Below, in pieces: positions 23,978 to 46,460 of a stretch of DNA of 64,000 nucleotides (position 1 is the first letter of the stretch; every line of letters starts with the position of its first letter). The DNA is from Trichoplax adhaerens (lineage: Eukaryota; Animalia; Placozoa), in contig NW_002060949.1 in the NCBI RefSeq assembly GCF_000150275.1, positions 1,051,836-1,115,835 of the forward strand, written 5' to 3'. Both the position numbers and the translations under genes were made by a program. The notes under the pieces were generated by a model. It ran no database searches and had not been told where the DNA came from. It worked only from the letters and a program-made list of their open reading frames with translations.

Positions 23978-26900
23978 TTAAGCTTCCTTTTTCATCGTTT
24001 CTTTTCGCGAGCGATTATTATGGAAGCAGAAACGTTGATTGAGAGCATTAATAAAAATGCAAAATTTTTCCTAGGGATAGTTCATGTAAAAGTAATAGTA
24101 ATGAATGAAAAAATAGCTAAAATGCACTGCTTTAAATTAGTAAAAGATTCGGTATGAACCATTAATACTAGTCATTATTAACTTACGCGATGCTTTCGTT
24201 TGAGTCGGCGTTTTTCCTTTTCACGAAGAACTTTATTGTCTCGAATGCTAATAGAATATTCATTCCATCTACATGTATATTAAGATGATCGACCCATAAT
24301 AGATTATTAATTTAAATTAGTACTGACTTACATAATTAAGATGAAGGCTTAGTGCTAAAGACTAATCGAAAATTGTTCATTTATGTGCTGTAAAACATTT
24401 CAAGTATGACTTCTAACGAATAAACTAACCAATATTGTTCAAATATCATTCACATTTAACCATATGATACTGCTATATAAGTATGAATCGTATAATAATA
24501 TTGAAACAGCTCATTCTTACCGCCAATCAAACATAGTTTTACTTTTTTTCTTCGGTTTTGTCGAAATTTTTCCATCTTCACCCATTTTAAAAATTAATCT
24601 TTTCTTGAAATAAATCTGAATGCTCTCTTCGATGCCATCCATACTAAGCGCTACATCAACTATACTGTAGGATCTGATTCGAAATGATTTTCTGTAATAT
24701 AATGAATCATAATTTTATAAATTTATCACAATTTGAATCACTGCATGAAAATAAGAGAATAACACTATCTTAGACTAGGCATTAAAGACTGCAGTACACC
24801 AATATGAAATTGTGATATGTGTTCATAATTATCGAAAGTAAAATATTGAAACTTCAAGGGTCTGACGCATATCCATATAGTCATAAATAAGTATAATATA
24901 CGAAGATAGTACATACAGGACGTCTACAATCACATCTTCACCAGTAATCGATGCATTAACAGCTACGATACTATATACGGAAGTTTCTAATAGCAGTGGA
25001 AAGCCAGGAGCTGTAGCATTGATTTGGCGAGCTTCATATATCAGCGCAGGCTTAATAAGGAAAGCTCTTTTATTCAAGAATCGCGAGAACACTTCATTTA
25101 AAGTTTCTTCATCAATTTTCCAAATTTTTCTTTCATTCATGATTTGATTTTCAATTCGTTCAGCTAACACATCCAAGCTCAATTCTTCATTCATTTCTTC
25201 ATTCATTTCTTCATTCATTTCTTCATTCATTTCTTCATTTATTTCTTTATTAAAATGATATAGTGAGATATCTCTGCAATTATCACAAAATAAAGGATAG
25301 GTATTTTAAAATATTGTTAACTTTCATTTCTATAAAGAATTACAGGTATTCTGTGTCCGTTCAAAAATAATCCAGGCATAGCACTTTACTATACTACATA
25401 AAGGCTGAGCATTATATTATTGAGTATATCAGTTTATTATTGCGGTCTAAAGTGCGTAATAAGGTCTTTTCTTTATATTTTAATAAATCTTTTTTTGGCA
25501 GCTATTATTTCAATATTATTACCAAGGCTAAATCTGTCAACAGCGATACAAATTACTGATTCCTACTTGAAACTTATCCAATTTTACTGTATACCAAATA
25601 CAAGTATATTAGAAATTTTAAAGTATCTTACTAACAAATATTTAATAATCACACTAGAATATACGTACACGGTCCCCGGTCTTCGATAGGATTTTCTCTT
25701 GCCTGATAAAATATCATATGTAGATATGCATACTTCAAACAGCATCAGATTCCGTTTAACAAAAGTGCTGTGGCAAAAACTCTTAACATAAATGAAGATC
25801 TATATCAAGCTAGGAATCCACATATAAGCATACGTATATCTATGTCATGAACTCTAGTATATCTAGATGTCGTGTCTATACATATTAATCAAGGCGACAA
25901 CAATATAGTCTTGACAATGATCAATTCCAACATCAAATATAACTTACATGAATTGTTTGCACAACAACATCATTTACTGTCGGAGCAACTTGCAGACTTT
26001 CTAATAAAGCTTTTATCTCCATAACAGAACTGGTTCTACTCCAAACGTTTTGAAGTTTTTGTAATATTACAGATGATGAACGAGCGGCAATTGCGCCCAT
26101 AAAGAAATCTCTAAATATGATTAATTTTATGTTAATAAACTGAAAAATTTGCTTTTAGCGTGAAATCGGAATCAAATCATCTAACCTCGCGGTTTTTTCT
26201 TTATGCATAGAATTCAAATGGCTAAATTCTACCTCATCCATATTAGTACAGTTATATACTCCCATTTCAAATGATTACGACCATGATTGAATATTTATTC
26301 TATCCTGTTGCGTGATTTGATTTTCATCCTGATTGAGAACAAAGAAGGGTGAGTGCTTCAGAAGCATTATGAGGCAAACACCAAACATAGTACGAAGAAA
26401 CTTAATTAAAATTTAATATTATACCATTATTTAAATAAATTACATGCTATACCATTTCGTTTTCAAAAACTTCTTCGTCAATATACTCTTCCGATAGCTC
26501 CCTTAAATTGATTGATGGCTTTTTCAATTCTCCGTTGCCTTTTAGACTCAATATCTAATAAAACATATTAGTATACTAGATTCTATGACCATGAATAGCA
26601 ATGAATAGTAATGAAAATTGTTTGCTTTAAGATTAGTTTTTTTCATGTAATTACATATAAAAAATCAATGTTCAGTTTTGCATTTCAATTATGCAATCGA
26701 AGTGTGCAAATTATACTCGAAATATCATGACTAATCAAGATACTTTAATCAGTAAAATATAACAAATACGATTCAATTTTTAGTGGTTGAGAAAAGTAAA
26801 GAACATTTTCCTGGCTGAATGAATGCTGAATAATTGACACAAATAATAACTAAATTTTTTGCATTACCAATTACAATTACAAAATCTCTATTGCAATCTC

Positions 26901-29873
26901 GGTAAATTATCTAAACATAAATAAAAATTTGAACAGATACTACAAGCTTTTAATCTGTTCTTGAATTGTTATTATTTTAAAACGATAGCAAAATAACTAG
27001 ATACGCGCATACTTACATAACTGATATAGTCAAATTTATTAAAGGTCTCCAAATCGGTTTGATAAAGGATAGAACTTTCGTCATAACTAAAATAATTTGC
27101 TAAAAATTTACAATCAATCATATAGAAGTTGTTACGCCTTTTCGCATTCAATATCAGGTAAATTTACTTATAATTTCCTTTATATCACTATAACTTACGG
27201 AGAAGAAAGTCGCAAGCTTTATCTTTTAGGTATGATAGCTCCTGCCTATACGGAATAAAAGAGTTTGTATTATGCGTTTAAAAAGCTTAAAACAGGCAAA
27301 AAACGGATATGTTTACAAAAAAACGAATATATTTACAAAAAACTAATGGTTCTTTGCCGGCCATGATGATCGATTACATTTTCTGTCCATATCTTGGCCT
27401 TAGTCAGTTGATAGATTCCATTTATTTCTTTAAATTCAAACCGACCACTAGCTGATTCAGTTATCTGTCAACGATCAAGTACAAGAGTCGAAAAAATATC
27501 ATAACGCTGTAAATCAGTGTAATTTACGTTCTTAATCGTAGAATCTTCCGTTTGATTTACCTGAGGTACTCCTTTAGAACTAGAGTAAGCCTTTGAAGGA
27601 TAAAGCGGTCGATTGCTACAGCGTAAACCAGTATTTATTTTATCGTAACAATTGTTCATAACACGGCATGGATAATAAGTAACATGGCATCTTCCCCTGA
27701 TACAAGCCTATCAAATGAATTATCATTTAATTTGCTACCTTATAATGATAGTATGTTTAATGTTTAAATTTTAATAATGAATTATACTATTACTGTAATA
27801 AGCAATGCAGCTATTCTACAAATTGAAATAATAAAATTCAAGGGAAGACAATACAATGTGAATCACATTTCCATCGCTTCATAAAGACTAACTATTGCTT
27901 ACCTCGACCACAGTTACACCCTTCTCAGGATTGCTCTTGATGATACTGTTATTAAATTGTAATAATTCAATAGCTCCACGTTTAAGATTTGTGGAGTAAT
28001 TAATGTCATCTGGGTGAAAATAAAGCCTTTCGCTGATTCCATTTCTATTTTCAATCATCATTGAATAATTAAGCGAAGTGGAAAATTGCTTTATTCGGTC
28101 TGAAGAAGTACTTAAATATTTGTACAGCATCTGTACTGCCGGTTGCACCTTTAAAGTAGTTCAAACAGGGCAAGTTAATATTCGACCATAATACAATATA
28201 TCTCAACAAGTTATTCCAAGTTATAAAAAGAACAGATAGTCTTTCGTTAAAATAATTTTGGTCTAGAATTATTTTGCAACATGGTTTATTTAACAATGTA
28301 TAAATTAATAGTAGAGTACTATTAAGTAAGTATACTCTTAAATCCCATTTCTATCACAACCTTAACAGGTCATGGTAATTCACGTAATGCTTATAGTAAT
28401 ACATGATACCACAAGACAGATCATCGATAAACTTTCGTAAAAGTGTAAAGTTAATTTAACTTTGTTATAAGCTTGAATATCCCAGTACGAAAATAAATAA
28501 TTTACAAGTCACGATATAAGAATTATTTGCATAGAATGCCAAATCCACCGCATTGCGAATAGTTAACCACTGAAATTTATGGATGAAATTATATATAATC
28601 GTATATACAGTACTGTGAATTTATCAAATATATGCAGCCCGTCATTTTATATCAAGGATGTCTACAATATGCAATAACTCTAAAATAAATTCTATACATA
28701 ATTTATAGTATATGATATCAAGGATTTATCATTCCTTTTCTATAATATCATAATTACTACGGTTGAATTTATTGATGTTAATACGCATAAGCATAGTTGA
28801 ATGTAGATTAATAATTGATATCGTCTTAGTGACACTTTTACTACCGTTGTAAGAAAGATAATTATTACAGTATTGCATTTTACATGCGTATATTAACAGC
28901 AAAGTAAATATTATAAGTAATTTTTCATGAAATTCTATCTTATATAAAAATTAAAAGTATACTAAAATTAAATTTCTCATAATCTGATTTTTAGTAATAG
29001 ATGGTTAACTTTTCGTTATAAGCCTTTGTTTTACCTGAAAATAAATATTGTTGTCGTCCATCTTTTTCTGATGAATATGAAAAAGAAACTCGATACCTCC
29101 CTCATTTCCGACACTGTTGCTGAGAACTAGGTCGTAGCGAAACTTTTGACATGGATGCGGCGAGGTATCTAAAATACCGTATTGGATGCAAAATTTTAAG
29201 GTATGTATGAACCTGAATCGAGATTATTTCTTGATTTATGTAATATGCAAAAGTAAACGACTAGATTCTAGATCAGTTAGGTGCAGTATCTAATTCATAT
29301 ATAGTACTTTTATATGCATACATTATCAAAAGTAATATTATTGATAAATTATAGAACATGCTATAAGGTAGAGCCCAATACTAAAGTCATCTTTTGCCTT
29401 TGTGCTCCTTTATTTTTAAGTACCAGATGGAAGAAAATTTTATATACTGCAACTACTACGGTCATTAATTCATGCATGCAGAACCATACTATTATATAGA
29501 ATCTTATATTAATTTGCATGAAAATTATGCACTGAGCACGTTCCGGTTTATTTCTGATCAACTATTCTAATTACACTAGTACCGGTGTCTATTCTAGGAA
29601 TAATACAGTCAAATATGAGGTGTGCTATTACGAAATGAACAAATTTTAAAGTGTAAAGAAAAACTGACGTATAAAAATTTTCACATTCTACATTCACCAA
29701 AGTGTATCAATACACGGCTGAAATGACAGTAATAACAAAATAGATTGGCGTAATCTATTTAACCTAGCTCAGAATACCGTAAAGGCAGAAAGCTAATTCT
29801 ATCTTATCTCACCTATTAAAATAAGAGAACCCAAAATTTGGAAGAGAATTGCAATTATGGCTTTATTCTGCAT
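23978..29873 (-). pseudogene. Short vitellogenin/LLTP-like gene A (mini-Vg A). 15 exons, about 690 codons, one in-frame TAA (26277-26275). Exons 29873-29813, 29168-29035, 28148-27903, 27707-27561, 27464-27337, 27245-27199, 27099-27017, 26554-26453, 26328-26186, 26110-25948, ~25781-25669, 25273-24917, 24691-24521, 24268-24187, 24070-23978
   Basis: Signal peptide MQNKAIIAILFQILGSLILI. LLTP N-sheet-like motifs LYFHPDDINYSTNLKRGAIELLQ and VVEACIRGRCHVTY. Helical RDFFMGAIAA. Then LYHFNKEI (cf. LKYFGDEV), ATAPGFPLLL (cf. PTQIGLPLH) and a terminal C-x10-C. All intron phases are compatible with GT-AG ends. Confidence 0.75.
25183..25251 (-). repeat. 12-bp coding tandem repeat (NEEM)n, about 5.5 copies, in mini-Vg A
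   Basis: TTCTTCATTCAT repeated on +, encoding NKEINEEMNEEMNEEMNEEMNEEL on -. Confidence 0.9.
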
Positions 29874-30004
29874 ATTAAACCTGTTGCAAACCGTATCAGT
29901 GTTGTGGCATGAAGAAAATGTTTTGATCTGATCTGTGGCAGGTAGTTAAAATTTACACTCTCTTTATAATTTTCACCCTTTATACTTTTACTATTATGGC
30001 TTAC

Positions 30005-33000
30005 CAATGTAGATTACGAATCACAGTGATTTTAGCTTCCGGGCCTTTTATTAAGGCAACATCCTTCAAGAAACCAATTAATCTATTGTGTTTTAATTTT
30101 TGACGACTGGCCATAATTTTGAGATTATGTTAAAAATAGATACAATAAGCATTTTCTTATACATTCTGAGTTTTTTCAACAATATACAGTACATTCTTCG
30201 GTATGAAAAGTCAAGCCTTTGATCTAAATAAGTAATTACGAAGTACTTATACTGTATAACTACGACAATATCTATATAAATCACACATCTAATTTGCAAC
30301 GTCATTTCCAAATTCGAACAAACCGAGTTTTGAAATACCTATAAAAGTATATGATACTGAAAGATTCTCTCAGCGATAATAACACAGTATTTACTACTGA
30401 AGGTATATAGAATTTTTCCTCAAAAATGTACGTCATATTAGTCTATTGACCTACAATAGACCGTGCAAAATTACTCTAACTATTTTTAAATACGCCTAAT
30501 TAGATACAAATAGGAATGATATCTATAGATGGCTTGCCTTTATTTATTTTAAAACGATAAATATATTAATGGATAAGCAGCTACTTACTGGACTATAAAA
30601 GTTACAGCTAGTATACATATTCTTGGTCCGTTTAACTACTTCTAGAATCTGATCAATCTCTTACAATTTCTCAAAGGCCATAAATCAATACAGAAAATTC
30701 CAAACATTCCTCATCAGCTATATTCGGGTGTTGTCCCATTATGGATATCATCTAAATGAATTCAAATTAAAAATTAATAACATTTCCATAAACCGACCTG
30801 TCACTTGATTATAATTACTACAATAGACGATAATTCATTTAATCATTAAACTGTCAAAAATTGGCGCCAGAAAAAGTACCAGCTGTGTCGAAAAATGCAC
30901 TGTTTATATTTTTTTAGCTTATTTTATCGAGGATGCAACAATTTTAAACTTTGAAGACAATCAATTATTATGCTATTATGCAAAGAGGCTGTACGATATT
31001 TTGTATCTTTCTCAACCTTGAGGGAAGCACTTTGACCTTTGCTGACACTGAGAATCATGTCAACTTGCTGGGTGTACCGTTCGGTAAATCTCTTCTATTG
31101 AGATCGTTTTTCACGTAGTCTTTGGCCGTTATTAAAATTTCATTCAAATTATAATATGAGTCATTTCAAACTTCAAAAGTGCCGGAGTTCGTGCAATTAG
31201 TTGTAAAGATCACAAATAATCTACAGAAGATCATTTAACTCAGTAAACTACTTGTAAACTCCTTGTAGTCTAAATTATCAAATTAACAGCATTTGTGGGC
31301 GTAAGTAATGTACGGTATATACTGTACCATACGAGTTGTTTCACATTGCTGAAGTTCCTCCTATATATTGCTATTAGTTATGCAAGAGGGTAATTAGTAG
31401 GAAGATGATAATGTATTCTGGAGACTGTTGTATCCTCCTGATAGACCCTTTATAACTTAATAATAATTTTATCCTATCATCTCTATCTTAATACGCAATT
31501 GATTCTTTGTTCAGATGTAACGTTTGTCGAGAAAAATTTACACCCGGATAATTATTTATCGTCAAAGTGAATTTTCGATAAGCATTTATTTGCAAAGTAT
31601 ATTTACATTTCTACTATTAATGCCCTTGCCGTATAACCTGCATTTTAGGAGGTAGTTTACCTGTAAAATTGACAACAATAGTTGCCATTAACTCGTTATT
31701 CAACGTGTAGTCCGTAATTTAATTAATTTGTATTGCTAAGCGATAATGTAATACACGATGTATAAGCATGAGGCAATTGTTATGACAGACTAATTGTATT
31801 CAGAGATCATTGCTGAAAGCATAAAAATTCAATTTTATTATGTAATGTTATTCAAGTGTAGTCGCCTGTAATTAGAATTGTATACAGTTGTATACTATAT
31901 AATTTTTTTAACTGCTGATACAAGCTGTAAGTACTGTACAAGTATTGATGAATATCACTATAGCTAATCGATATAAAATCTCTCCGTCACATGCAATTTT
32001 AGAACGTACCTTGAACTGCATATTTTACTTTTCCTTAAGAGCGCATTGTATTCTTTCAATTAAGTCACAGCATATTTGCTTGAAATATCCGATTTTACTT
32101 TCACTTTGGTAAAAATTTTATCTATAAGTTTGTTTATAAATTATTTTATATTATATAATTGATATTAGACGCACCTTGGATGCTAGTTATAATACTATAT
32201 CTGACTTTAAAAATTTCTCATTAGGAAATAAATTTGTCAGATAGTCCCATGATATACAAAACTAAGAGAGCTTTCTATTAAATAAACTCTCAAGTAAGCA
32301 TAGACTTATCCACTTATTTTATTTTATTTTACAATCTTAATTTCATTCAGCCGAAAATATAAATTAGGCACCATAAAAATCCCATTAAACTTAATTTGTT
32401 ATCGTGAGATTGCACGTAATATTTCCTATTATTGTGATTCATCTCTCCCATTTATTCATTGGAACCATTGAATACGGCACGGCACACCTATTGCTATTTC
32501 GATTATTTCACATTTCTTATGCAACGTCAATTCCCATGTTTTTCTCTAAACGATTCTCCACCTCACCATGGCACAGAGTTAAGATTAATATTACATTAGC
32601 AATAGTTTAAAATATCAGGCATACTCTGGATTACTTTATGAGCCTCCAATATTTAGTATACTGTATAATAGAGTGACGATCATAAATTAATACCAGTATA
32701 GGGATAAGAATCATTAATTATATATTTTGAATTTATTAATTATTAATTACAGATAGTGATCATGCGATATATCGTATGATACTCATCATTAGCCTTAACT
32801 ACGTCATGAGATCCTAAATAGAGAGATTTGATAAATTTTATTTATTTGTGACAGTATTTATACATTTCTACATAATAAATATCATCATATGCATTTATTC
32901 TTGCTATGAATTTCTATTTATATCTGGTATCAAATAACAGGGCACATTAATCATAATAACTTTAACTGGATATGTTGTCGTGTAACATATTCGTAATTTA

Positions 33001-35330
33001 AGTAGTTTTTAAAATTGGCTTCTATTATAATTTATTTATTGCATCATCTTGAAAAACTGATTGATTAGTTTAACTATCATTTCTTACACATAGTAAAGCA
33101 AAGATAGTCGAGGAAGAAATTCTAACATTAATCTTTGTATTGTTGTTGTCACGTAAGCTAATGTGCCCACTCTGCATTTTAGAATATTCGATATACTGTA
33201 GATCTAGTAGCTTTAAATCGAAAGTAAATCTTACTCCTGTTAATTTCAGGGTAATTCCGCACTAGTCAATTTCATGCATAAGTTTACATATTGATGTTCA
33301 AATGCGAATTTCATTCTTGATAGACCAAGAATCAATTTAAAAATATAAGGGCTTTGCATTTCATATGAGGTCATAGTTTTGTAAAATGAGAATCGGCTGT
33401 GAAGAAATGGAACAAATTGATAATTGTGTTAGGATAAAAATAAAAAGTAAATTCAGCAATTAATAGATTTTAGTATTTTGGATATAGAACACGTGGCCAA
33501 GTATGACCAGTATCTATTAAAGCCAGAAATGGGAAAGAAATAAATGTACTATGATATTTTACGTACAGTCCAGTATTTTTCGCCTTCATTTTATTAGCAA
33601 TAAGCATCATCAGAACTTTGAAAATTATATTGAATATGCCAGTAAATTCTTACCTATCTTGTCCTAAACAATGCTTTAATAATTACCATTTCCTAATCGC
33701 TTTGATTTAGTTAAGCTCTGAAGTATAGCGTATTTATCTTTCCGATCATCAATGATGTGTGTAGTAAAATTCAAAGATAAATTTATTCCGCCTCATACAA
33801 ATATTAACATTTATGAACTAAATGCCACTTTTACCTTTGCAGTTTACACCATAACTTTGTATTAATTTGGCTTGAATAACAAAAGTGTTGTTTACTCCTA
33901 CGGCCGCCAATAATAGCCTTAAACAATTTTGCCAGATCAGCAAAATTTTACTTTTGTCAGTTGTGACTGCTAATATTTAGCATTGAATTTAATTTTGTAT
34001 GGATAATTTGATTCCTATGAAATATGCTATTGAACGTGCATTCATTTTACTTGAGCTGTAGAAGTTCACTCCCACTTCTACTGACAATAATCATTTAAAT
34101 TCATTTTACCCAAACAATAAAATTTTTTCGGCATATTTATAGCCACTAACAGTCACAAAAATAATTTTGAATTAGAGATGCCTGAGAAGTCAGTTATATG
34201 ATGACTTAAGTCTGCCATGCTGTAGAAGTAATTTTAAACTAAATAGCCTCTATTTACCTTAGAAGTAATTTCTTTTCTAAAACTGTGAATAATTATGTCG
34301 TAACTGTCAATTTTCCCATTTATAGTCCATCATAAACGATATAATCATTATTATACATCAAGGCTGATTAATCTTTGCTATGTCAAATTATGATGGAATA
34401 AATCATAATACATTACACGTGAGAATATAGTACATTATATAAGGACTTTAAACGGGACTTGATTAGTTATAACAACTTTCAATAAAACTTTATTAAAACA
34501 ATGTTGCCTTCTATTGTTATTAATAGTCATCAAGAAGTGACGTGGCATTAAATCAATTTTGCTTCGTAAGCTTAAGCTTTTAATTAAAAATGTTAACAAC
34601 AGCTTTGAATCAATTTCACGTTAGAAATTATGCTTTACTTGGATGATTGCAAATAACACCGACAATAACTTAGGATCCAACTTGCTGTAACGGTTTTAGT
34701 CAATGACGTATACCGCCACACTGCAAAAGCAAATTTTACCTCTGTTGGCAGTAACAATAATAGTAATTTGGAATTAGCATTGTTTTAGAATTCTATGGCG
34801 GACCACACCGATCAATTATCACAACGAATAGATTTTGTTGCATAAGCAAATTCTACCTTTACGATGTTATTGTTAGCTGTTTTATTAAGTTAATTTTTTG
34901 CTTTAAAAGTCAAAGCGTCTGTTCATGGCCGCCTGTACTAATAAACTGTGAACAGCCTTTATTAATTCTGCGTAAAGGTAATTTATATCTGCATTTACCA
35001 CTTTTACGATGGAACAGTCTTGACTTGGAAGGTAACCTCTAATAAAAAATAAACGCAACATGAAAAATAGTCTATGTGAAACGATGAGATTGTGCACTAG
35101 TATACACCGTACCGTGCCACTAAAGTAATGCTAATGAAGACTTTACGCGCTAATGCTTCATAATCCTGTCTATTTAAATTGCTAAGGCATCACCTGTTGT
35201 CTTTGATTACTTCCATTATGCATCTACGTCTAAGAATCGTAAAACATTTGCTAATTTTAGTTTTGACATTGAGGAAAAATGCATCCCGCTGATGATGAAC
35301 TGAGGGAAAAAAATGGAATCCAAATAAATA
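30005..35330 (-). pseudogene. Possible heavily decayed LLTP-like copy (exon-like blocks with stops)
   Basis: AG...GT-bounded blocks contain stops. They include ISGMHFSSMSKLKLANVLR (~35300; F-x9-N-x2-R as in YFHPDDINYSTNLKR), RLLLAAVGVNNTFVIQAKL (~33900; cf. RDFFMGAIAARSSSVILQKL) and FCISWDYL (~32250; cf. CISTYDIL / CKVAYDYL), in colinear order. Confidence 0.35.
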
Positions 35331-37317: not shown

Positions 37318-37734
37318 CCTATTCCACTAAGCAGTGAATGTGAATACCTGGTAGTAATTACTGCGGACACGTACAGGTTTATGCAATAAAGATTATTAAT
37401 TAACAACCTACACCTAAAATCCTAATGTTAATTATAAGGTATCTTTTTCCTTGAAGTATATTCTGTTATTACATAAAAATGGAAACAAATTCAATGTCAT
37501 AGTGATGTCAACTTGCAGCTATAGTAAGCAGTACTACCAATCACCTTAGATGCCATATTACCCCTACCTTGTAACATGTTAACTGATAAAATTAATATAT
37601 TGATTTAATTACCGGTCTCACCGCCTGTCCAAAAATAATAATTGATTTTACTACACTATTACTAAAAACAGTCGATTCTTAGAGAGCAAAATCTAACTTC
37701 TCTATTACTGTAAATATGATCAATAATTTAGATC

Positions 37735-40700
37735 TTATGGGTATTCCGCCGATTGAGGATTTTCTTTGGTGTTAAGAACGCATAGCTTCTCTCGCTTGGC
37801 TTCCAAGGTAATACAAATTCTCCTCTAGTGATTGTCATAAATTAAAAATGGGAATTGAATGACGTTGAGAATATATTAATCAGACTAAACTACCAGAGAT
37901 AACTTTGCAAGCCACGTGGCAATCTTAGAAATAGATATTTCGTCTACCTTAAGCTTAGCCTTGGTAGCTGGAGCAATCGGTTTCACTCGATGCACTTTCA
38001 AGTTACTCCCAATTACAAAGGAATAAATATCCCATCTACAATAATAAAATATCTTAATTAACTTTATCTTAATGCTATTTGTTGCTAACCTATCGCTGAT
38101 ACAAGGTCGTTACCAAAAAAGCATCCAATTTTTAAAGTTGAGACCTAAATCATCATTGGCATAGCATACCATCATTGCATTAACAATATCATCAAACTCA
38201 CTGTATATCGGATCCGAGAAAGACCAGATTAGAGCTTTTATGTCGGTTAAACTCCATACTGCCCGACTTGAACGGTAATATTTGTTGGAATTTCAGGTAC
38301 AAATGAAAAGAATTCTCCAAACCGTAGGCCAGTCTTACATCAACTGCCATGTACGTGTGTATCCGACAGTCCAGTCTATGATCAATTTTTCAAATTTAAT
38401 ATAAATTCCATACTTATCAGTTGTCCCTGTTATCAGCGTCCATTTTTGAATCGAAACCTTTTTATAGAACTGTCCGCTAACCCTTGAAACTAATCTCACA
38501 TTCTTAGCAATTATAATTACATGAAGAAAAGTTGATAACTTACAACGTTGTAACAACGAGTTTTTCTTCTTTTACGCGTATTTCGCCCTTTCTACTTATT
38601 ACCACATCACCTCTAGATACATGATAAACCCCTCCGCCTTTGAAAAGTTTGGAAATATCCGACTTTGATGCTAACTGCCTATATTCCATCATAGGCCCTT
38701 CCCCTATGATAGTTCGCTTCAACAATTCACGCGAATCATACCAATCCATCTCGAGGCAACCTGGGCAAAGTTTCTCACATTCTCTCACAACAGCATCTCT
38801 TCTATGGCTTTCACAGCCTTGCGAAGTTGTGCAATTTTTAAAGACCTCCAATTGTACAACTCTAAATAAGATTTTGAATATGGCGATAATATCATTAGTA
38901 TTATAAGTTTGTAGAGACTAAATAAGGATGTCTCATAAGGGAGAAGTACGGTACATAGAAATAGAAAGACAATGTGTTTAAAATTAGTATAGCATTATTC
39001 TATCATTGACTAGTAAATAATAAAATCCTCTACGATAGATATCTGTAAATATTTATGTACGCGTTATGTTTATTAGCTGAACCCACGCTAGTGCAGTACA
39101 TATCGCATCTAGTTAGAAAGATATGATATCCCCCTGTAGTACGATACTTACGTTGTCCTTAATTCATTTGATCTCTTTCGATCAAGGTAATCGTAGGCTA
39201 CTTTACAATTATAGCTAAAGCCATACTTTATTGCTCTCGAAGAGGCACAATATTTCTTCCAGTATTAAAAATTCATGTTTGATTAATTTATTTTACAAAT
39301 TAGCCACATTACCGTGTCATTAGTTCTTAAAACGAAAACAGATCACTTATAGCGGTTAAGTTTAGTTAGAAAATAGTTAATCTCTTACACTTAGGGCCGG
39401 AAAGTCACCCACGGTAAATTTCGAGCATTGCATTAGACCAAGTAGTAAAAATTTTCCCAAAAATTCTGGCAATGTTCCTTCATAGAGTTTGGCAAGGTAG
39501 GTCCTGAGAATCACTGGAGATTCACAGGATTGCTTAGCTAATGCAACACTTATGATCGCGATACCTCTAAAAGAGCATTTTTAATTATATACCATATATA
39601 ATAAGATATGGCCATATATTAATAGTTGTTTAACTCTACTATATAATTGAATTTATACTCCAATATTTATGGATAAACATCAAAAAGACATACCGTTTGA
39701 AACCGAAGAAAATTTTCTCAACGTCTGCTAATTGTGGTACAGTCAATGTATTAAAACTTTCAGTCATGTTGTTAACTTCGTTGCGAAACTTTCCTAATAT
39801 ATGCCTATCTTTTTGCCGGATTGTATTCTAATATATTAAATTAATAGAAAATCATTGAATACTGGATGATGTTCATGCAGATTAGATTTAATCTTCAAAG
39901 CAAATTCGAAACTGTCAGAATTCATTCTATATATTATAATGCATACGTTCTCTTCAGCAGAGTCTTGATCTTCGATCTTTTCATAAGATTTCATAATCGT
40001 CTAAAGGATTAAATTCAATTAGTACGATAATTTGTAAAGTTAATGCATTAATAACTATATGTATACTACAATGTCATATAATTTTATCAATTTCCGGATT
40101 GATTTACTGCGATAGGGTTTCAATTTAGAACGACTATATATGTGTATTAACTGCTATCATCAAAGTGGAGAATAATAAGAAGGAATAACAGTTAAGTTTG
40201 GATGTACTTTCTAAGATCTAGTGTGTAAATACCGTTAAAATACAGATGATGCTAAACGGCGTCATTGAAGTACCATGCTTGACTTCGATAATTTAAAAGC
40301 AAAACCTTAAACTCTTCCTACTTAGCGATGGAAGGCCTCATATCACTCTGAGTAAATTTATGCACTCTCAATAGTACAAATAATATCTAAAGATATAATG
40401 CTATACGGTGTGATTGAAGTAGCAAGCTTAACGTTGACAATTTAAAGTAAATTCTTAAGTACTCTCTTCTTAATTGAAATACTAGCTATGATTAAATTGA
40501 TACACTCTCAATACTACAAATAATATTGACTATGTAGTTGTTATCCATTATGATATTTAATATTCTTATTAATTCTATAATAGGCGAATTATGTACAAAA
40601 AAAGTCAGCTAATAAATTAATCTACCAATATAGCGATTTTTATCACATTATGAATTATACAGCAAACAATAACCGAACCTACATTGTCTATAATTTGGCT

Positions 40701-42700
40701 TCTTCGATAATATTCTTCCTTAAATACTAATTTATCAGCATCTACTGCTTGGGAGAAAGAATCAGCTATTTTTCGGATGTACAGTATTTTGTAAAGGTAT
40801 TGACAGGTTAGAATGACAAATATGTAGATATATTTTAAGAATATAGTAGGAGCGTGAGTATACCTGATTCTGGGCCAAAATTACAAGAGCCCGGTGTTTG
40901 TTCTTTATATTTTATAGTCCGGCTAAAATGGAGACGATCATGCTATGTCAGTATTAGGATGTAGTTATCTTGTCTAATAACCTTTCTTATAGTACAAATA
41001 TCAATAGAATTTTCCTAATCCTGATACTTCAGATTTACTTTAACACTAAAAGCATCATTTCAAATAATAATTTTATACGCATTGTTAATGTTGTATCTAA
41101 ACCCTTATACAATGTGGCCACACTTCAATAAATACCTTAAATTAATATCCTGTTGCACTCCGCTACTATTGGAATGCACTTCACTATTTTGAGTTGCTAT
41201 ACTTATAGTTAGCACTCGTCCACGACTTTGATAGGGAATTTTACGAGCAGCAATCGTTGTTGCAAAGGTTTGAGTAATCTAGTACGAAATTATTTGAAAG
41301 CTTAACATTGACAACTCCATACATAATAGGAGTGCTATTCTTGGTCGCATTATTCAAAAAAGAAATTGAATTACAATATGGAAATGTACAATTTAAGGTA
41401 ATTTTACCGAAGGAGGATTTAGGTTACGGTAATAAAATACAGTGCTCAATATTTAAAAAGTAGGAATCGCTTCAACATCAATATACGCAGCCACGAAATA
41501 ACTTTTGTTGACCTATGATAGTTCGTAAATGTACAGCAACTATAAGTATTCCTACCTCATTGCTAGTCATTCCATTACAACTTGCAGGCTGTTGGTAGCA
41601 GTTTCCTGGAAAGTATTCCCCAAACAAGCTATTACTGTCCTTCTCTCCAAGGCACTTGTCTTCAACTAGGCATTTGCCAAAGGGAAGACTCTATTGTCCA
41701 AAATAGATAGGATTTTATGCTCTAGATTTTGTTTAATGAAATATTAAATAAACCTGACAATATCATATTTTTTGAATTATTAGGCTTGTATTATTGCACT
41801 AAAAGCTAGGTTTGCTTAGTTTCAAATTTGATGATGCTCGTACTGCTATAATTATTTTGATATCACTTACTTGCAACCTGCACTCTGGTTTAACAGCCTC
41901 CGAACAATTAAACTGAAGCTGAGGGAGTTCATAGTAAATCTTAAACTCGTTCAATTTTATTAATTGTGACCACCCGTCTTCAGACTTTGAAAAATAAACT
42001 TCTTTATCCTGCATTTTCTTACTCTCTTTATATTTGAATTGAAATCTGAAGGATTTATAATCCTCATCAGATTCCATGGAAGCAAGCTAATTTATTATAA
42101 AAATAGATCATTAATCCAAGAAAGCCAAATTTTCGATAGAAATTTATATGATTTAATTAGTATACCAAGAAGAGACTATCTATTAACTTAACGCAATTAG
42201 ACCTTGATAGGTTTATTTCTTGATTGACCCACGTTTATGTTAATCTGGGATTTACCTCTCTAGATTATGAATATGGAAAACACGTAACTTAACAATGATA
42301 TCCTTAATTTTGTTTTTGTAACAGCTAATATATCAGTAATATACTTCATGAAATAATTTCTATATGTGCATAAAGTAGTATTTTATATTTTTTGCATAAT
42401 GCATAATTATCTTAGACTTATTTAGTTACATAACTATCTTAGGCTTATTTAGTTATATGACTATTTTAGGCTTATTTAGTTATAATCTACATCGCTATAC
42501 TTTAAGAAATCGCATACTGAATCCATAGGTGAAGTTTCTGTGTCAATACGCGTATTAGCTTCTGAATGAATAACTAAATATAATCAAAGAAGCTACATAT
42601 CATAAAGTTACTTTTATGTAGTGATACAGACAAGGCTATGAAAAAATAGTTACAGGTAAAATTAGTTTATCTTACGATATATGATTGAAACGAAATTCAT
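37735..42700 (-). CDS. Short vitellogenin/LLTP-like gene B (mini-Vg B), paralog of gene A. The 5' exons and one internal exon near 38.1-38.3 kb are uncertain
   Basis: Exon-by-exon match to gene A with the same intron phases: YFSKSEDGWSQLIK; SLPFGKCLV; ITQTFATT (A: ITESASG); NTIRQKDR (A: NQITQQDR); KYCASS..CKVAYDYL (A: SFCHS..CISTYDIL); LLKRTIIGEGPMMEYRQL (A: LNKRAFLIKPALIYEARQI); WDIYSFVIGSNLKV (A: WNEYSISIRDNKV). Terminal exon RRICITLEAKREKLCVLN...YP* (C-x10-C). Confidence 0.72.
42410..42484. repeat. ~27-bp tandem repeat, about 3 copies, intronic
   Basis: TTAG(A/G)CTTATTTAGTTA(C/T)A occurs three times. Confidence 0.8.
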
Positions 42701-45700
42701 TGTGAGTTTCGGCTTGCTAAGTAGTTATGGTATGAGCTTTTGATTAATACACTCATACCCGTACATGATACAAAATCTAGAGCTCAACTTCATCAAGATT
42801 ATGATTTAGGACAATTATCAAAAACATCTTTTACATCTAAATTTTCTGTAATTATCATATTGCAAAAATTGTATAAATTTTACGGCAAACCGTTAAAATA
42901 AGGTACCAAAACAGTGCATGAATTTATATACGTATGCCTAGTTATCATAACTACTAAATGTTTAGCATGATTAATACGGAAGCAATTTACGTGACCGACA
43001 AAGAACAATTCTCAGGATCATATGATCTGTTGCATTCATAATTGATAAGTCGGGAAATTTTAATATTTTTCTTTTAAGTTATTGTGTTCGGTGCATATTA
43101 GAGTGATAGCGTACTACAGAATTTATATAGCTTAATTTAACAGGTTGTCTCACAATTTTCAATAAGCTTTTATGAAGTTGTGGTTCAAGAATGAATAAAT
43201 ACTAGATGATGATATTAATAGCAATAATACTTAAATAGTTTTATTAATGCAATTTTAAGCTGACTATAATCTCAATTTTAATATGCGTAGCTGACCTGAT
43301 GATATCTAAGCATTCGAAATAAATTATAGTTACTAGTTAAACTACTGACTACTGACAGTTGACTGGATCCTATTTATTTAATTCATTACGGTACTATACT
43401 AACTGTCGCCCATTTAGAACTTCCTTTAGTACTGTACGTACGATGGTAATTCTCATGTGCAATTCGTAGACGACGTAAATCGTCGATTAAAATTAGTGTA
43501 ATCGTTAGCTTTTACGTATTAAGCAAATTACACTATGTAGTATAGCTATAAAAAATTATAGTATCTAAGTAGTTTTACCATGAAAGTCATCATAAAATGT
43601 TTGTAATCCACTGAGCTTTTGTAAACGCGATAGTTCATAAAAACAGGGTAGGTTTCTATGACTTTCATTGAATGTGCAGAGTTCTCCAGTAGGTTGGTAA
43701 CGACGAAATGATAGCATCGTTCCTTATACAGATTTCCTAATCGATTAGTAAATTTCAGATTTATTTCGTAAGCTTTTCATTTTTTCTAAATGGCCATGCA
43801 ATCAAGTACAGAATTATTCTATGCATCTGCTATCTATAATTTAGGTCATATTTAAATTTTAACTATTTACAGCTAATTCCTGAATTTTCTCGATTAATTG
43901 ATTTAATAGCAGATACAATATTTCACATCAGGCTACAGTATATGCTAGTAATAACTCTAGGGGTATTCCATATCCGACAGTACTATACTTATCTAAACGA
44001 ATTGCAGGTACTCAACAAGAGACTTGCTTACTAACTCAACTATTTAATCATTATGCTACTTTTTGTCCTCCGTATTTCATTTATATCATATCGTTAATAG
44101 CCGTTATCTACCGAAATATGTTACATTTAATGGATAAAGTAATTAAAAAACAATTTCTAGCTTCAATCATAATTAAACATTTTCTCAGTAGGCTAACTAC
44201 AGTACAAAGATTAGGATAAACAAATAGTACCATGTCTAGGCCATCTAACAGATAATCAAATGACATCTAGTCATCTATTAATTAATAACAATAATAATTA
44301 ATCGAGTACAAGAATGCATGTTTACAATTTGAGCCCACTTACGATATGGAGCATCTCATGTAATTTAAAATAATTGTTACAGTTTAAATATATTGTGACG
44401 TATACTAATGCATTGTTCTTCTTTCAATAACATACCGGTACTTAATACGTTTGATAGCGGCAATTGCATAGAGAAGCCTATAGCAATGCTAATCATTATG
44501 ATCAATGCTTTTTCCTGTAGCATTATCACGGTAGCGGTAATTCTTTTATGTCAACAGTTGAAGTTCTAGAAAAATAGATAAAGTAAATTTTCTCTTTAAT
44601 GTATTATTGTCAAATAATTATAAATAGAACGAAAAAGGGAATAATTACTATATGTCGATTGTACTATAGAATAAAGGTTATTACAAAATCTTGTCTTGTA
44701 TGCACTTTTTTATCTATGCGCTCGTATTGTACATTATTATGGTCTGTAGTCTATGTTTCTATAAAAATTTTAAAAAGAGCCAGACTAACGTGGTTTAATA
44801 ATTGTAAACAAACCATATCACCGCTACTCTGCATTTTTTCGGGTACTCCTTATCAATAAGACTTAAAAATGGATTCATTTTTATCATACTTATCTATTTA
44901 ACCTACATATTTTGAAATTTCATTATGTATTGATCAAGTTATAGGTGAAGGCTTTTATATTTTAATTTAACGTTGAAAAGCATTAAAGTTGCAAGAGGGT
45001 TACCGCTGAATCTCTTACGATTATGGATCAATAGTTGGTTAAATTTAGTACTATCGATACTACATTGGACACTGTACAGTATATCTGTTTGCAATGTTAG
45101 GAAAATTGCAAAAAAGGGTACCGGTATTTTAAAAAAAACTAAGCAGACTGCAGAAAATTAGGACTTTTGGAAGCAAGTATGAATAGTAACAACCACAATA
45201 AAATCTACTTGCAGTAGCTATGTTTGGAGGTAGATCCATATCAATGCACGAGTAATATTTGAAAAAGATCTACTAATTAACGAGGCTATAGCTAGATGGC
45301 ATTATAGCTTATTATTTGTAATTATCTTACTTAGAGGTGTAGGCTTGAAAATGAAGATACAAGTAAGGGAAAATGATTCTATTGCAATCTTAGTTTGCTA
45401 AAATGTAAACAACAAAAAATAAAATCATAGGGTTATCTAGCTAGTCAATTAACATTGAGAAATTGAGTGATCGTATCTTATAGCGATACGTTAGAAATAA
45501 ATAAAATTTTGAAGGTAAGAAGTAAACTTATAACTATAAGCAACTGACCTGATAATGAAATTGATGCTGGTAGATCTTCGTAGCAATAATGAGTAAATGT
45601 ATGCATAAGCTACGTCTTTTATAGCCTCGGACTTGGTAATCTGAAAAGAGAGTAAAGAATATAAAAAGCAACATTCTTTGGTAATACATTGCTACGCATT

Positions 45701-45729
45701 AATTATATCCTAGAAATGCGCATGTAGCT

Positions 45730-46460
45730 CCACTATACTTTGATTGTTAAACCAAATTCTATGACAGGACACGTGAAAGCTGGCCAATAATCAATTAGAT
45801 TCCGTCGAAGTTATCGTTGATTGCTGAGACATTGTCTATGCTATTCTAGCCGCAATTGTTTTTGAGTCTTAATATCACAGAATACTATGACAACATTATT
45901 TTCATGACTTCATCATGGAAATTACCTTTATTTTAATTCTGTCGACTCTGGCCGTGAGATCCGTATCGTACCATCTAGATGTAATCTTAATTGAGTCGTT
46001 ACTGCCACGTAATCATAAAGGCGAAATAGCTACTTTCCATATCTAATTACACCGTACATTGACTGTTGAGAAAATTGGCAAGTGCAGTCAATTATTGCCG
46101 TTAATCCTTTCGAACTGTAATTATAACTTTCGTTAACTCCTTCATGAGGCCATTAAACGCCATCATCCTGGATTAATTGGCTAATGAAGAGCATACATGA
46201 TCAGAGATGAAGCTAATATGGAACTCGAAAACTGCATTAACGGCCGGCAAAAGCGTATCTATTCATGCATACTTGTAAACAATGACATCATATATTTGTT
46301 TTGCATGAGGGAAACTATTTCAGCGAGTATGATACCTTGTTACTGTATTTGCTGTATCGGGCAATACGGTAACAATAATCCATAGCTAATTAGACTTGGC
46401 TGCACTTTGCGAAAATGCCGTGAAAGCTTTGCAACTCTTATGCGCATTATAAACAAATGC
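45730..46460 (-). pseudogene. Decayed 3' exons of another LLTP-like copy
   Basis: Colinear exon-like blocks: ...IYDVIVY| (A: EDVIVDVL|); SQLIQDDGV*WPHEGVNESYNY (A: MDGIEESIQIY); phase-2 WYDTDLTARVDRIKIK| (A/B: W...R/K|); HRQC...*...YWPAFTCPVIEFGLTIK (vitellogenin: PWLPFTGPMQSRIWIK). Confidence 0.45.

What the first reader, a model, noticed from the sequence alone, without database searches (positions are those of the whole stretch)
23978..46460. Hidden tandem family of truncated 'mini-vitellogenins' sharing an internal deletion and lacking vWD
Seen: two minus-strand multi-exon genes (A 29873-23978, B ~42700-37735) match each other exon by exon and match intron phases of the vitellogenin at 228-7971. 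Both jump from the early helical exon (SFCHS..CISTYDIL / KYCASS..CKVAYDYL; Vg TVCKL..CWLAYGSS) through a phase-2 intron straight to the YLKYFGDEV-equivalent exon. That skips the LKAIGNAG / QVASFVYSHL helices and most of the C-sheet, roughly 250 aa. Both stop just after the C-x10-C motif (A CIFINALNQRFC; B CITLEAKREKLC; Vg CYEISPDGRKLC), so there is no vWD. Established: in Vg, apoB and MTP these helices and sheets build the lipid-binding cavity. Inference: the same architecture in two very divergent paralogs suggests an old, selected, secreted ~690-aa LLTP subfamily with a remodelled lipid cavity. Nearby decayed copies point to birth-and-death evolution (possible yolk, lipid-cell or defence roles).
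Basis: partly seen in the sequence, partly recalled or inferred. Interest (0 to 1): 0.82.

Follow-up and report, generated by a model that had tools for sequence, protein, structure and literature searches.

The report
Two truncated vitellogenin-like genes in Trichoplax
Next to the ordinary yolk-protein (vitellogenin) gene of the simple animal Trichoplax lie two very divergent, apparently intact sister genes that keep its front end, lack the same internal block and the whole tail, and probably encode small secreted proteins of unknown role.

Summary
The core observation holds. The window is Trichoplax adhaerens.

Gene models:
- Gene A (29873-23978, minus) threads into 15 GT-AG exons and 682 codons with no internal stop.
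- Gene B threads into 15 exons and 657 codons. It starts at 44523, not ~42700.
- Both have the same 14 intron phases. Two B exons were picked by phase.

Homology:
- A descends from a vitellogenin-type large lipid transfer protein (LLTP). One exon reaches the Pfam Vitellogenin_N cut-off and another weakly hits the open beta-sheet family.
- 4 of 19 vitellogenin exon pieces find their cognate A exon as top hit.
- B matches no LLTP profile. It is tied to A by exon 13 (Z 10, 0 of 20,000 shuffles), exons 14 and 15, and gene structure.

Architecture:
- Both genes splice from just after the C..C helical motif into the open beta-sheet exon across 395 and 290 bp. The vitellogenin spends 2,419 bp there.
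- Both stop soon after C-x10-C and have no vWD.

Status:
- Codon usage is coding-like in both.

Not supported: decayed copies, and any family larger than two genes.

Untested: expression, fold, function.

The spliced proteins were not joined, searched or folded.

The parts
1..7971 (+). Reference vitellogenin gene, 3' two thirds. Its first exons lie about 3.2 kb upstream of the window, in L001.
   Evidence: Exon-wise Pfam hits: PF01347 at window 526-876 (E 6.9e-17) and 1353-1529 (E 2.8e-11). PF09172 at 3089-3394 (E 1.9e-7, positions 129-240). VWD at 6913-7254 (E 7e-5).
29813..29873 (-). Gene A exon 1: ATG plus hydrophobic signal-peptide-like stretch. Ends in phase 1.
   Evidence: The vitellogenin first exon also ends in phase 1.
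29035..29168 (-). Gene A exon 2 (first N-sheet strands), phase 1 to 0
   Evidence: Its top hit of 385 ORF pieces in the B locus is the B e3 ORF. It is not similar to vitellogenin exon 2 (p 0.90).
27903..28148 (-). Gene A exon 3 (N-sheet, 'NLKRG' strand), phase 0 to 0
   Evidence: PF01347 positions 77-132, E 1.8e-5, 24.0 bits against a cut-off of 24. Genome scan E 0.011. Against the vitellogenin exon: Z 5.7 and top hit of 375.
27561..27707 (-). Gene A exon 4 (G-x-C ... MNNC), phase 0 to 0
   Evidence: Top hit of the cognate vitellogenin exon. p 0.04.
27337..27464 (-). Gene A exon 5, phase 0 to 2
   Evidence: Splice sites. Same phases as the vitellogenin exon at -1382..-1231.
27199..27245 (-). 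Gene A exon 6, phase 2 to 1
27017..27099 (-). Gene A exon 7, phase 1 to 0
26453..26554 (-). Gene A exon 8 (acidic), phase 0 to 0. A possible extra mini exon at 26910-26875 was left out.
26279..26400 (-). Gene A exon 9 (helical). Ends '..INIQSW' in phase 2, like the vitellogenin mini exon that ends '..YNIERW'.
   Evidence: Second-best hit of that vitellogenin mini exon.
25948..26110 (-). Gene A exon 10 (helical, 'LLDAL'-equivalent), phase 2 to 0
   Evidence: Same phases as vitellogenin 228-393. Sequence similarity is not significant (p 0.28).
25669..25781 (-). Gene A exon 11 (C-x14-C..YD helical motif). Ends in phase 2 at a basic stretch and is the upstream edge of the deletion.
   Evidence: Top hit of the first 37 aa of vitellogenin exon 544-876. 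p 0.017.
25274..25668 (-). Gene A junction intron (395 bp, GTACGT..TTGCAG)
   Evidence: Longest stop-free stretch is 28-29 aa. The vitellogenin equivalent is 2,419 bp.
24917..25273 (-). Gene A exon 12 (open beta-sheet exon with an in-frame 12-bp x 6 repeat), phase 2 to 2
   Evidence: PF09172 positions 142-220, E 0.025, 14.3 bits, below the cut-off. 40 of 74 residues identical to P0001, which ends at the same exon end.
24521..24691 (-). Gene A exon 13, phase 2 to 2
   Evidence: Against B e13: score 60, Z 10.0, 0 of 20,000 shuffles. Top hit of vitellogenin exon 4110-4321.
24187..24268 (-). Gene A exon 14 (W-N-x-Y-S..., basic), phase 2 to 0
   Evidence: Against B e14: Z 4.4, p 0.0025, rank 1 of 385. 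Same length class and phases as vitellogenin 4500-4587.
23978..24070 (-). Gene A exon 15: C-x10-C, then a stop 15 codons later
   Evidence: Against B e15: Z 5.2, p 0.0005, rank 1 of 385. The vitellogenin acceptor at 4982 has the same phase and lies 4 residues before the first Cys.
44436..44523 (-). Gene B exon 1 (tentative): ATG plus hydrophobic stretch, donor GTATGT, phase 1
   Evidence: Top candidate listed in a scan of 42570-45500. Similarity to A e1 is not significant (389 of 5000 shuffles).
42491..42561 (-). Gene B exon 2 ('..TETSP..C..'), phase 1 to 0, weak donor GTAGAT
   Evidence: The resemblance to the start of A e2 was judged by eye only.
41871..42086 (-). Gene B exon 3 (N-sheet remnant). 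About 43 aa shorter than the A e2-end plus e3 equivalent, and keeps 'LQFN'.
   Evidence: Rank 1 for A e2 and rank 2 for A e3 among 385 ORF pieces. No Pfam hit.
41556..41690 (-). Gene B exon 4 ('GKC..'), phase 0 to 0
   Evidence: Splice sites. Rank 10 of 385 for A e4.
41136..41278 (-). Gene B exon 5, phase 0 to 2
   Evidence: Starts 'ITQT' against 'ITES' in A e5. Rank 32.
40885..40922 (-). Gene B exon 6 (tentative, chosen by phase)
   Evidence: The candidate with the best splice-site scores among the 4 with the right phases.
40683..40741 (-). Gene B exon 7, phase 1 to 0
   Evidence: Rank 55.
39863..40000 (-). Gene B exon 8 (acidic). Weak donor GTATTC, followed by a 35-bp intron.
39694..39827 (-). 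Gene B exon 9, phase 0 to 2
39389..39566 (-). Gene B exon 10 ('LLDAL'-equivalent by position), phase 2 to 0
   Evidence: No sequence support (p 0.56; rank 55).
39152..39255 (-). Gene B exon 11 (C-x13-C..YDYL, then RKR). Phase 0 to 2. Upstream edge of the deletion.
   Evidence: Against A e11: p 0.0245. Tied for top score among 385.
38862..39151 (-). Gene B junction intron (290 bp, GTAAGT..ATTTAG)
   Evidence: Longest stop-free stretch is 22-44 aa.
38544..38861 (-). Gene B exon 12 (Cys-rich start, then beta-like part), phase 2 to 2
   Evidence: The only long ORF between e11 and e13, with strong splice sites. No similarity to A e12 (p 0.59) or to any family.
38202..38375 (-). Gene B exon 13, phase 2 to 2, donor GTGAGT
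   Evidence: Found as the top hit of A e13 among 385 ORF pieces: score 60, next best 36. Z 10.0.
37948..38035 (-). Gene B exon 14 (W-D-x-Y-S...), phase 2 to 0, weak donor GTAGAC
37735..37824 (-). Gene B exon 15: C-x10-C, then a stop 14 codons later

Best explanation
A and B are two real, apparently intact protein-coding paralogs in Trichoplax adhaerens.

Origin (shown or strongly indicated):
- They derive from a vitellogenin-type large lipid transfer protein (LLTP) gene like the one about 16 kb away.
- Their common ancestor lost about 245 profile positions. These cover the second half of the alpha-helical domain (Pfam Vitellogenin_N from about position 445 to 590) and about the first 100 positions of the open beta-sheet domain.
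- It also lost everything beyond about 15 residues after a conserved C-x10-C, including the vWD domain.
- That gene then duplicated, and the copies diverged almost beyond sequence recognition.

Products:
- A encodes 682 residues and B 657.
- Each would have a signal peptide, an N-sheet barrel (further eroded in B), about half a helical domain, a basic linker at the deletion scar, about 230 residues of beta-sheet, and a short basic tail.

Function (inferred, not shown):
- Such a protein cannot build the large lipid cavity of a yolk lipoprotein.
- It could still act as a secreted binding module. The N-sheet could serve as receptor or ligand face, and a reduced MTP-sized beta-sheet pocket could hold a few lipid or other hydrophobic molecules.
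- Possible settings are yolk formation, external digestion or defence.
For: Organism: (TRIADDRAFT_57881, on a contig of the same length as C1408).

Open 15-exon models: all introns GT-AG, 0 internal stops, identical phase series. Exon-length correlation r = 0.94.

A and vitellogenin:
- PF01347 on e3, E 1.8e-5, at the 24-bit cut-off.
- PF09172 on e12, E 0.025, on the same profile segment as the vitellogenin exon.
- Exon-wise shuffle tests: Fisher p 5e-5 over 9 exon pairs.
- 4 of 19 vitellogenin exon pieces have the cognate, colinear A exon as top hit among 375 ORF pieces.
- A is closer to the vitellogenin than to the two other LLTP genes of the genome at e3, e4 and e11.
- At least 9 intron phases are shared.

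A and B:
- e13 scores 60, Z 10.0, 0 of 20,000 shuffles. It was found blind as the top hit.
- e14 p 0.0025 and e15 p 0.0005.
- Fisher p 2e-8 over 8 exon pairs.

Deletion:
- Junction introns are 395 and 290 bp with no ORF above 44 aa, against 2,419 bp in the vitellogenin.
- The five vitellogenin pieces from the deleted block find only noise in the A and B loci.

No vWD hit in either locus.

Coding status:
- Codon log-odds per codon are A +0.006, B -0.027 and -0.048 with the corrected exon set, and vitellogenin +0.010.
- Null ORF sets average -0.204 with sd 0.035. 0 of 5000 null sets reach A or B at -0.027. The lower corrected value was not re-run against them; the null maximum was -0.088.
- P0001, from another public assembly, is 40 of 74 identical to A e12 and ends at the same exon end.
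Against: - B has no LLTP profile hit in 13 of 13 ORF or exon queries.
- B is not similar to vitellogenin exons (Fisher p 0.42). 0 of 19 vitellogenin pieces rank a cognate B exon first.
- For 8 of 14 A exons the designated B exon ranks 8th to 55th of 385.
- B e1 and e6 were picked because their phases fit. Several B donors are weak (GTAGAT, GTAGGA, GTATTT, GTATTC, GTAGAC) and one B intron is only 35 bp.
- For A, only 2 of its exons touch a Pfam LLTP model, one exactly at the cut-off and one below it.
- Exon-wise hhalign supports only e3 (52% for A alone, 75% for A plus B).
- PDB sequence searches and the two ESM Atlas look-ups gave nothing.
- No annotated public protein contains A e12.
- No homologue of B e3 or e12 was found, within the tool's length limits.
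- No expression evidence of any kind was available.
- Shuffle p-values are optimistic, because I chose the exon pairs. The non-cognate control gave 3 of 56 at p<0.01.
Confidence: 0.72

Rival explanations
1. A and/or B are silent relics. They would be duplicated and deleted vitellogenin copies that are no longer expressed and are drifting, so the architecture carries no function.
For: - No public protein model contains A's largest exon, although the T. adhaerens proteome is in the collection.
- B is extremely divergent, has lost about 43 aa of the N-sheet, has several weak donors and a 35-bp intron.
- B has no homologue in the searches that could be run.
Against: - Both copies keep 650+ codons open across 15 exons in a 31% G+C genome, yet their divergence has erased nearly all similarity.
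- Codon usage matches real genes and not the null ORFs.
- A e12 is 54% identical to a fragment from another assembly, with the exon end kept.
- Identical intron phases are kept in both genes.
Confidence: 0.17
2. B is not a paralog of A or of any LLTP. The resemblance would come from picking exons to fit.
For: - There is no Pfam, PDB, Atlas or vitellogenin similarity for B.
- Most exon pairs are not significant.
Against: - A e13 found B e13 blind as the best of 385 ORF pieces with score 60 against 36, Z 10.
- e14 and e15 also rank first, and e3 and e11 rank second, all colinear.
- The genome-wide profile of e13 finds only these two places.
Confidence: 0.04
3. The 'deletion' is a gene-model artefact. 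The missing helices and sheet would be supplied by unrecognised exons or alternative splicing.
For: - No transcript data were available.
- My first choice for one B exon was wrong, so the models are fallible.
Against: - The junction introns are only 395 and 290 bp, with at most 44 stop-free codons.
- The five vitellogenin pieces from the missing block score at noise level anywhere in either locus. In the A locus, 4 of the 5 top hits are on the wrong strand.
- PF01347 and PF09172 genome scans at E up to 10 show no further exon hits in the loci.
Confidence: 0.03

Closest known systems
Canonical vitellogenin (the neighbouring gene, window 1-7971 plus upstream exons)
   Same: - Signal-peptide exon and N-sheet with the NLKRG-type strand.
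- G-x-C..NNC exon and the first half of the helical domain, including the C-x14-C motif.
- Part of the open beta-sheet and the C-x10-C exon.
- At least 9 shared intron phases.
   Different: - A and B lack Vitellogenin_N from about position 445 to 590 and about the first 100 positions of the open beta-sheet.
- They lack everything after C-x10-C, including vWD.
- They have 657-682 codons, far fewer than the vitellogenin gene, whose exons span more than 11 kb from about 3.2 kb upstream of the window to 7971.
Microsomal triglyceride transfer protein large subunit (MTP)
   Same: From recall, not tested here: MTP is an LLTP without vWD that ends after a small two-sheet lipid-binding domain. A and B end at a comparable point of the architecture.
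   Different: - From recall: MTP keeps the whole helical domain and stays in the ER with PDI.
- A and B lack half of the helical domain.
- PF19444 (MTP_lip_bd) gave no match anywhere in this genome, so the comparison could not be tested.
Honey bee Vg-like-B and Vg-like-C (PMC4825421, passages read)
   Same: They are lineage-specific vitellogenin paralogs that kept the N-sheet and a signal peptide and lost parts. [quoted passage not shown] Vg-like-C is about half-length.
   Different: - Vg-like-C has only the N-sheet, and Vg-like-B keeps the helical domain.
- An internal deletion that removes half the helical domain and the start of the C-sheet while keeping later sheet strands is not described there.
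- Those genes are from insects, not placozoans.

Membership tests
LLTP superfamily (Pfam Vitellogenin_N, PF01347) | Match to the N-sheet plus helical profile at or above the curated cut-off | tested here: inconclusive
   - A e3 alone scores 24.0 bits against a cut-off of 24 (E 1.8e-5, positions 77-132).
- The other A exons give no hit.
- B gives 0 of 13 queries.
- The whole spliced proteins were not scanned, because the joined step was left out.
LLTP superfamily (Pfam Vit_open_b-sht, PF09172) | Match to the open beta-sheet (C/A-sheet) profile | tested here: inconclusive
   - A e12 scores 14.3 bits, below the 23.7 cut-off (E 0.025). It covers positions 142-220, the same segment as the vitellogenin exon at 129-240.
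- B e12 gives no hit.
LLTP superfamily | Common descent shown by shared exon-intron structure with a bona fide LLTP gene | tested here: met
   - A shares at least 9 intron phases and positions with the vitellogenin gene.
- 4 of 19 vitellogenin exon pieces find their cognate A exon first.
- B shares all 14 phases with A. Two B exons were chosen by phase.
Vitellogenin proper | C-terminal von Willebrand type D domain (PF00094) | tested here: not met
   The genome scan lists 33 VWD matches. The only one in this window is the vitellogenin's own at 6913-7254, and none lies in A or B. Both genes stop 14-15 codons after C-x10-C.
Vitellogenin proper | Complete helical domain ('LKAIGNAG' and following helices) and complete C-sheet forming the lipid cavity | tested here: not met
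   The junction introns of 395 and 290 bp replace a 2,419-bp interval. The deleted vitellogenin pieces find only noise in both loci.
LLTP superfamily | LLTP three-dimensional fold and lipid binding | not testable with these tools
MTP | MTP lipid-binding domain (PF19444) | tested here: inconclusive
   There was no match anywhere in the genome or in the controls, so the search says nothing.

The most novel reading that the evidence does not exclude
Placozoans carry a hitherto unannotated class of secreted 'mini-LLTPs', smaller than MTP. In them the fold works with only half of the helical domain and a shortened beta-sheet pocket. These proteins would have a dedicated role, for example carrying a few lipid or hydrophobic molecules, or acting as ligands of lipoprotein receptors during the rarely observed oogenesis, in external digestion or in defence. 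That would show a viable minimal LLTP architecture that arose independently of MTP.
Probability: 0.3. Interest if true: 0.62.

Novelty: new variant of a known kind. Interest (0 to 1): 0.45.

Why it matters
LLTPs (vitellogenin, apoB, MTP) are the basis of animal lipid transport, and placozoans sit near the base of the animal tree. A pair of old, intact, internally deleted vitellogenin derivatives would matter in three ways:
- They would show how far this fold can be cut down and still be kept.
- They would add two probably unannotated secreted proteins to a very small gene repertoire.
- They would give a concrete target for asking what vitellogenin-like proteins do in an animal whose sexual cycle is barely known.

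If they turn out to be unexpressed, they are just a tidy example of duplicated-gene decay.

Tried and rejected
Searches that gave nothing:
- All-against-all BLASTP of window ORFs at E<1e-3 found no A/B/vitellogenin pairs. A relaxed BLASTP was swamped by noise.
- Pfam on B ORFs and exons: nothing.
- phmmer of A e12, B e12 and B e3 against PDB sequences: no LLTP.
- ESM Atlas on B e12 and A e3: top scores 0.80 and 0.79 with low recognition, so not usable.
- The search for homologous proteins on the B e12 and B e3 ORFs: none. That tool only sees proteins of 0.55-1.75 times the query length.
- Exon-wise hhalign against small alignments of the three other LLTP genes: only e3 rose above 1%.
- An HMM of A e12 plus P0001 found nothing but A itself.
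- PF19444 and PF09175 scans of the genome: no match anywhere, so uninformative.

Decayed copies:
- Three-sequence exon HMMs and 35 exon queries against all ORF pieces gave maxima of 44 and 42 in 30.0-37.6 kb and 42.8-47.0 kb. Control regions gave 54 and 47.
- The hits are not colinear. I rejected this claim.

My own errors and their corrections:
- My first B exon 13 (38482-38339) was wrong. The scan replaced it.

Literature:
- Five searches showed no listed paper on truncated placozoan LLTPs. Of the 28 papers holding both 'Trichoplax' and 'vitellogenin', only 15 titles were listed and seen.
- PMC13186252 turned out to be irrelevant.
- Supplements were not opened. Extended data of 10.1101/2022.01.24.477498 (placozoan ApoB tree) may list placozoan LLTPs that I could not see.
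- The search of earlier findings returned nothing twice.

Full report
**Where we are.** The window is G000:C1408:1051836-1115835 of a 105.6-Mb genome in 1,414 contigs, with about 31% G+C. An ORF at 9285-9602 (minus) matches NCBI's TRIADDRAFT_57881 of Trichoplax adhaerens. That protein sits on a contig of 5,881,857 bases, the length of C1408. The animal is therefore a placozoan and the window is not human. Exon by exon it hits Vitellogenin_N (window 526-876, E 6.9e-17; 1353-1529, E 2.8e-11), the open beta-sheet family (3089-3394, E 1.9e-7, profile positions 129-240) and vWD (6913-7254, E 7e-5). Its first exons lie about 3.2 kb upstream of the window. The genome holds two more LLTP genes, at C1408:240-254 kb and C1411:5.294-5.303 Mb. 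Between the vitellogenin and gene A lie unrelated genes, RMI2 and HOOK.

**The observation.** I rebuilt both genes from splice sites and reading frames.
- Gene A runs from ATG 29873 to the stop at 23978. It has 15 exons, 2,049 nt, 682 codons, all introns GT-AG and no internal stop.
- Gene B runs from 44523 to 37735. It has 15 exons, 1,974 nt, 657 codons, all GT-AG and no internal stop.
- The phase series is the same in both: 1,0,0,0,2,1,0,0,2,0,2,2,2,0. Exon lengths correlate at r = 0.94.

Three cautions apply to the models.
- B exon 1 was the top signal-peptide-like candidate in a scan of 42570-45500. B exon 6 is the candidate with the best splice-site scores among 4 with the right phases. 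Both were chosen partly because their phases fit.
- Five B donors are weak and one B intron is only 35 bp, against 52 bp at the same place in A.
- An optional mini exon of A (26910-26875) was left out.

**Is A an LLTP?** Yes, with good confidence.
- A exon 3 hits Vitellogenin_N positions 77-132 with E 1.8e-5 and 24.0 bits, exactly the curated cut-off. The genome-wide scan gives E 0.011.
- A exon 12 hits the open beta-sheet family weakly (E 0.025, 14.3 bits, below the cut-off). It does so at positions 142-220, the segment that the vitellogenin exon 'YLKYFGDEV...' covers.
- The other A exons give no Pfam hit.
- Exon-wise Smith-Waterman scores against 2,000 shuffles give, for A against the vitellogenin:
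  - exon 3: Z 5.7
  - exon 4: p 0.04
  - exon 11: p 0.017
  - exon 13: p 0.011
  - five further exon pairs: not significant
  - Fisher p over all 9 pairs: 5e-5
- In an unbiased scan, 4 of 19 vitellogenin exon pieces found their cognate A exon as the best of 375 ORF pieces, all colinear on the minus strand.
- A is closer to this vitellogenin than to the two other LLTP genes at exons 3, 4 and 11.
- Intron phases agree at introns 1-5, at the introns before and after the 'LLDAL' exon, and at the two introns around the 29-aa exon before the C-x10-C exon. That last acceptor lies 3-4 residues before the first Cys in all three genes.

**Is B a paralog of A?** Yes, but only through A.
- B has no Pfam hit in 13 of 13 queries.
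- It has no significant similarity to vitellogenin exons (Fisher p 0.42).
- 0 of 19 vitellogenin pieces rank a cognate B exon first.
- PDB, Atlas and protein searches gave nothing.

The link came from a blind scan of 14 A exons against 385 ORF pieces of 37-43 kb.
- A exon 13 found an ORF that I had not chosen (38201-38389), with score 60 against a next best of 36.
- That ORF fits the required phases with a GTGAGT donor. It gives Z 10.0, with 0 of 20,000 shuffles reaching the score. It replaced my earlier, wrong exon.
- A exons 2, 14 and 15 also rank their colinear B partner first. Exons 3 and 11 rank it second.
- The other eight designated B exons rank 8th to 55th, so they have no sequence support.
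- Fisher's p over 8 exon pairs is 2e-8.
- These p-values are optimistic because I chose the pairs. The non-cognate control gave 4 of 56 at p<0.05 and 3 of 56 at p<0.01.
- B has also lost about 43 residues of the N-sheet relative to A. This was judged by eye.

**The shared deletion and truncation.**
- In both genes the exon with the C-x13/14-C..YD motif ends 17-19 residues after the second Cys. It ends in phase 2, in a basic stretch.
- It splices across 395 bp (A) or 290 bp (B) into the open beta-sheet exon. These introns hold at most 44 stop-free codons.
- The same interval of the vitellogenin gene is 2,419 bp and carries the 'LKAIGNAG' and 'QVASFVYSHL' helices and the first sheet exons.
- The five vitellogenin pieces from that block score only at noise level in both loci. 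In the A locus, 4 of the 5 top hits are on the wrong strand.
- By Pfam coordinates the loss is about positions 445-590 of Vitellogenin_N plus about the first 100 of the open beta-sheet, roughly 245 positions.
- Both genes stop 14-15 codons after C-x10-C. In the vitellogenin the same exon runs on for 185 codons and vWD follows. No vWD match lies in A or B.
- Same position and same phase in two genes this far apart means the deletion and the truncation predate their duplication. This is inference.

**Alive or dead?** There are no transcript data.
- Indirect evidence favours real coding genes.
  - A codon table trained on a 3,632-codon ORF of the apoB-like gene gives A +0.006 per codon and the vitellogenin +0.010. 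B gives -0.027, or -0.048 with the corrected exon set.
  - Sets of intergenic ORFs average -0.204 with sd 0.035. 0 of 5,000 such sets reach A or B at -0.027; the null maximum was -0.088, and the corrected -0.048 was not re-run.
  - Both genes keep more than 650 codons open although almost all similarity has been lost.
- A search of 1.84 billion representative proteins with A's largest exon found two hits.
  - P0001 is an unnamed 75-aa fragment from Logan assemblies, seen on 2 contigs, the longest 4,416 bp. It is 40 of 74 identical and ends exactly at the exon's end.
  - P0002 is a spurious repeat protein.
- That result cuts both ways. The exon is conserved somewhere else, yet no annotated protein of T. 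adhaerens contains it.

**Family size.**
- A exon 12, B exon 12 and a profile of the best-conserved exon 13 find only themselves in the whole genome.
- Exon profiles and 35 exon queries find nothing above control-region noise in 30.0-37.6 kb or 42.8-47.0 kb.
- ORFs in those stretches look non-coding.
- The 'decayed copies' and 'birth-and-death' reading is therefore not supported. The 'family' is two genes.

**How it probably works (inference).**
- Each product would have a signal peptide and the N-sheet barrel. By recall, the N-sheet is the receptor-binding part of vitellogenins, and PMC4825421 says the same for the bee protein.
- It would then have about half of the helical domain, a basic and possibly cleavable linker at the deletion scar, about 230 residues of sheet, and a lysine- and arginine-rich tail.
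- Without the second half of the helices and the first sheet strands it cannot enclose a yolk-sized lipid load.
- A small pocket of MTP size, or a pure binding role, is more likely. I put about 0.3 on a dedicated function of this sort, and cannot choose between yolk, digestion and defence.

**Compared with what is known.**
- Truncated vitellogenin paralogs are known in insects. Bee Vg-like-B lost the vWFD domain and part of the cavity. Vg-like-C keeps only the N-sheet (PMC4825421, passages).
- ApoB is reported in placozoans (10.1101/2022.01.24.477498, passage).
- I found no listed paper on such genes in placozoans in five searches.
- I therefore rate this a new variant of a known kind, of moderate interest.

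Noticed in passing
window 9993-10518: Tandem array with units of 85 and 175 bp, about 5.4 copies of the 85-bp unit at 93% match. It lies just beside the RMI2-like ORF at 9285-9602 (minus). It produces long repeat ORFs on both strands.
   Followed up: no
window 25179-25251: In-frame 12-bp repeat of 6.1 copies inside A exon 12. It encodes a run of N-E-E-M and accounts for about 20 extra residues in A relative to B.
   Followed up: partly
window 42403-42484: 27-bp repeat of 3 copies inside the 404-bp B intron 2. By eye, that intron interrupts what is a single exon in A. It may be an insertion that became an intron.
   Followed up: partly
window 25669-25700 and 39152-39180: Both genes carry a cluster of basic residues (K/R pairs) exactly at the deletion scar, at the end of exon 11. 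This could be a convertase-type cleavage site between the two halves. Both C-terminal tails are also K/R-rich.
   Followed up: no
window 38339-38482: A second ORF overlaps the acceptor of B exon 13. It has AG and GT ends, would also keep the frame (phase 2 to 2), and is the best B-locus hit of the vitellogenin's equivalent exon (score 35, noise range). It is probably intronic, but a mutually exclusive exon is not excluded.
   Followed up: partly
window 26401-26452 and 39828-39862: There are very short introns at the same place in both genes: 52 bp in A and 35 bp in B.
   Followed up: no
window 15858-18700 (minus), 60507-60728 (plus): HOOK-like coiled-coil exons (E 1.2e-6 and 5.9e-5) and a Rer1 exon (E 5.3e-18). 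These are ordinary neighbours.
   Followed up: partly
window 22371-22645, 54000-55700, 63151-63461: Dispersed G+C-richer repeat built on GTACT-like units. It gives 'TVQY/YCTV' ORFs on both strands, and the 54-56 kb stretch reaches 42% G+C.
   Followed up: no
window 22712-23266 (minus): 185-codon ORF just downstream of gene A with no Pfam match.
   Followed up: partly
G000:C1408:240587-254472 (L002, L004) and G000:C1411:5294151-5303406 (L003, L005): These are the two other LLTP genes of the genome. The first has a single 3,632-codon open frame, Vitellogenin_N, open beta-sheet (E 5.5e-34) and vWD, and is apoB- or apolipophorin-like. The second has Vitellogenin_N and a weak open beta-sheet hit. 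In the first, a C-x11-C motif lies about 65 residues after the end of the open beta-sheet match.
   Followed up: partly
whole genome G000: PF19444 (MTP_lip_bd) and PF09175 (Vit_b-sht_shell) gave no candidate at all, even in the clear LLTP genes. The exon-wise first look seems blind to these models.
   Followed up: no
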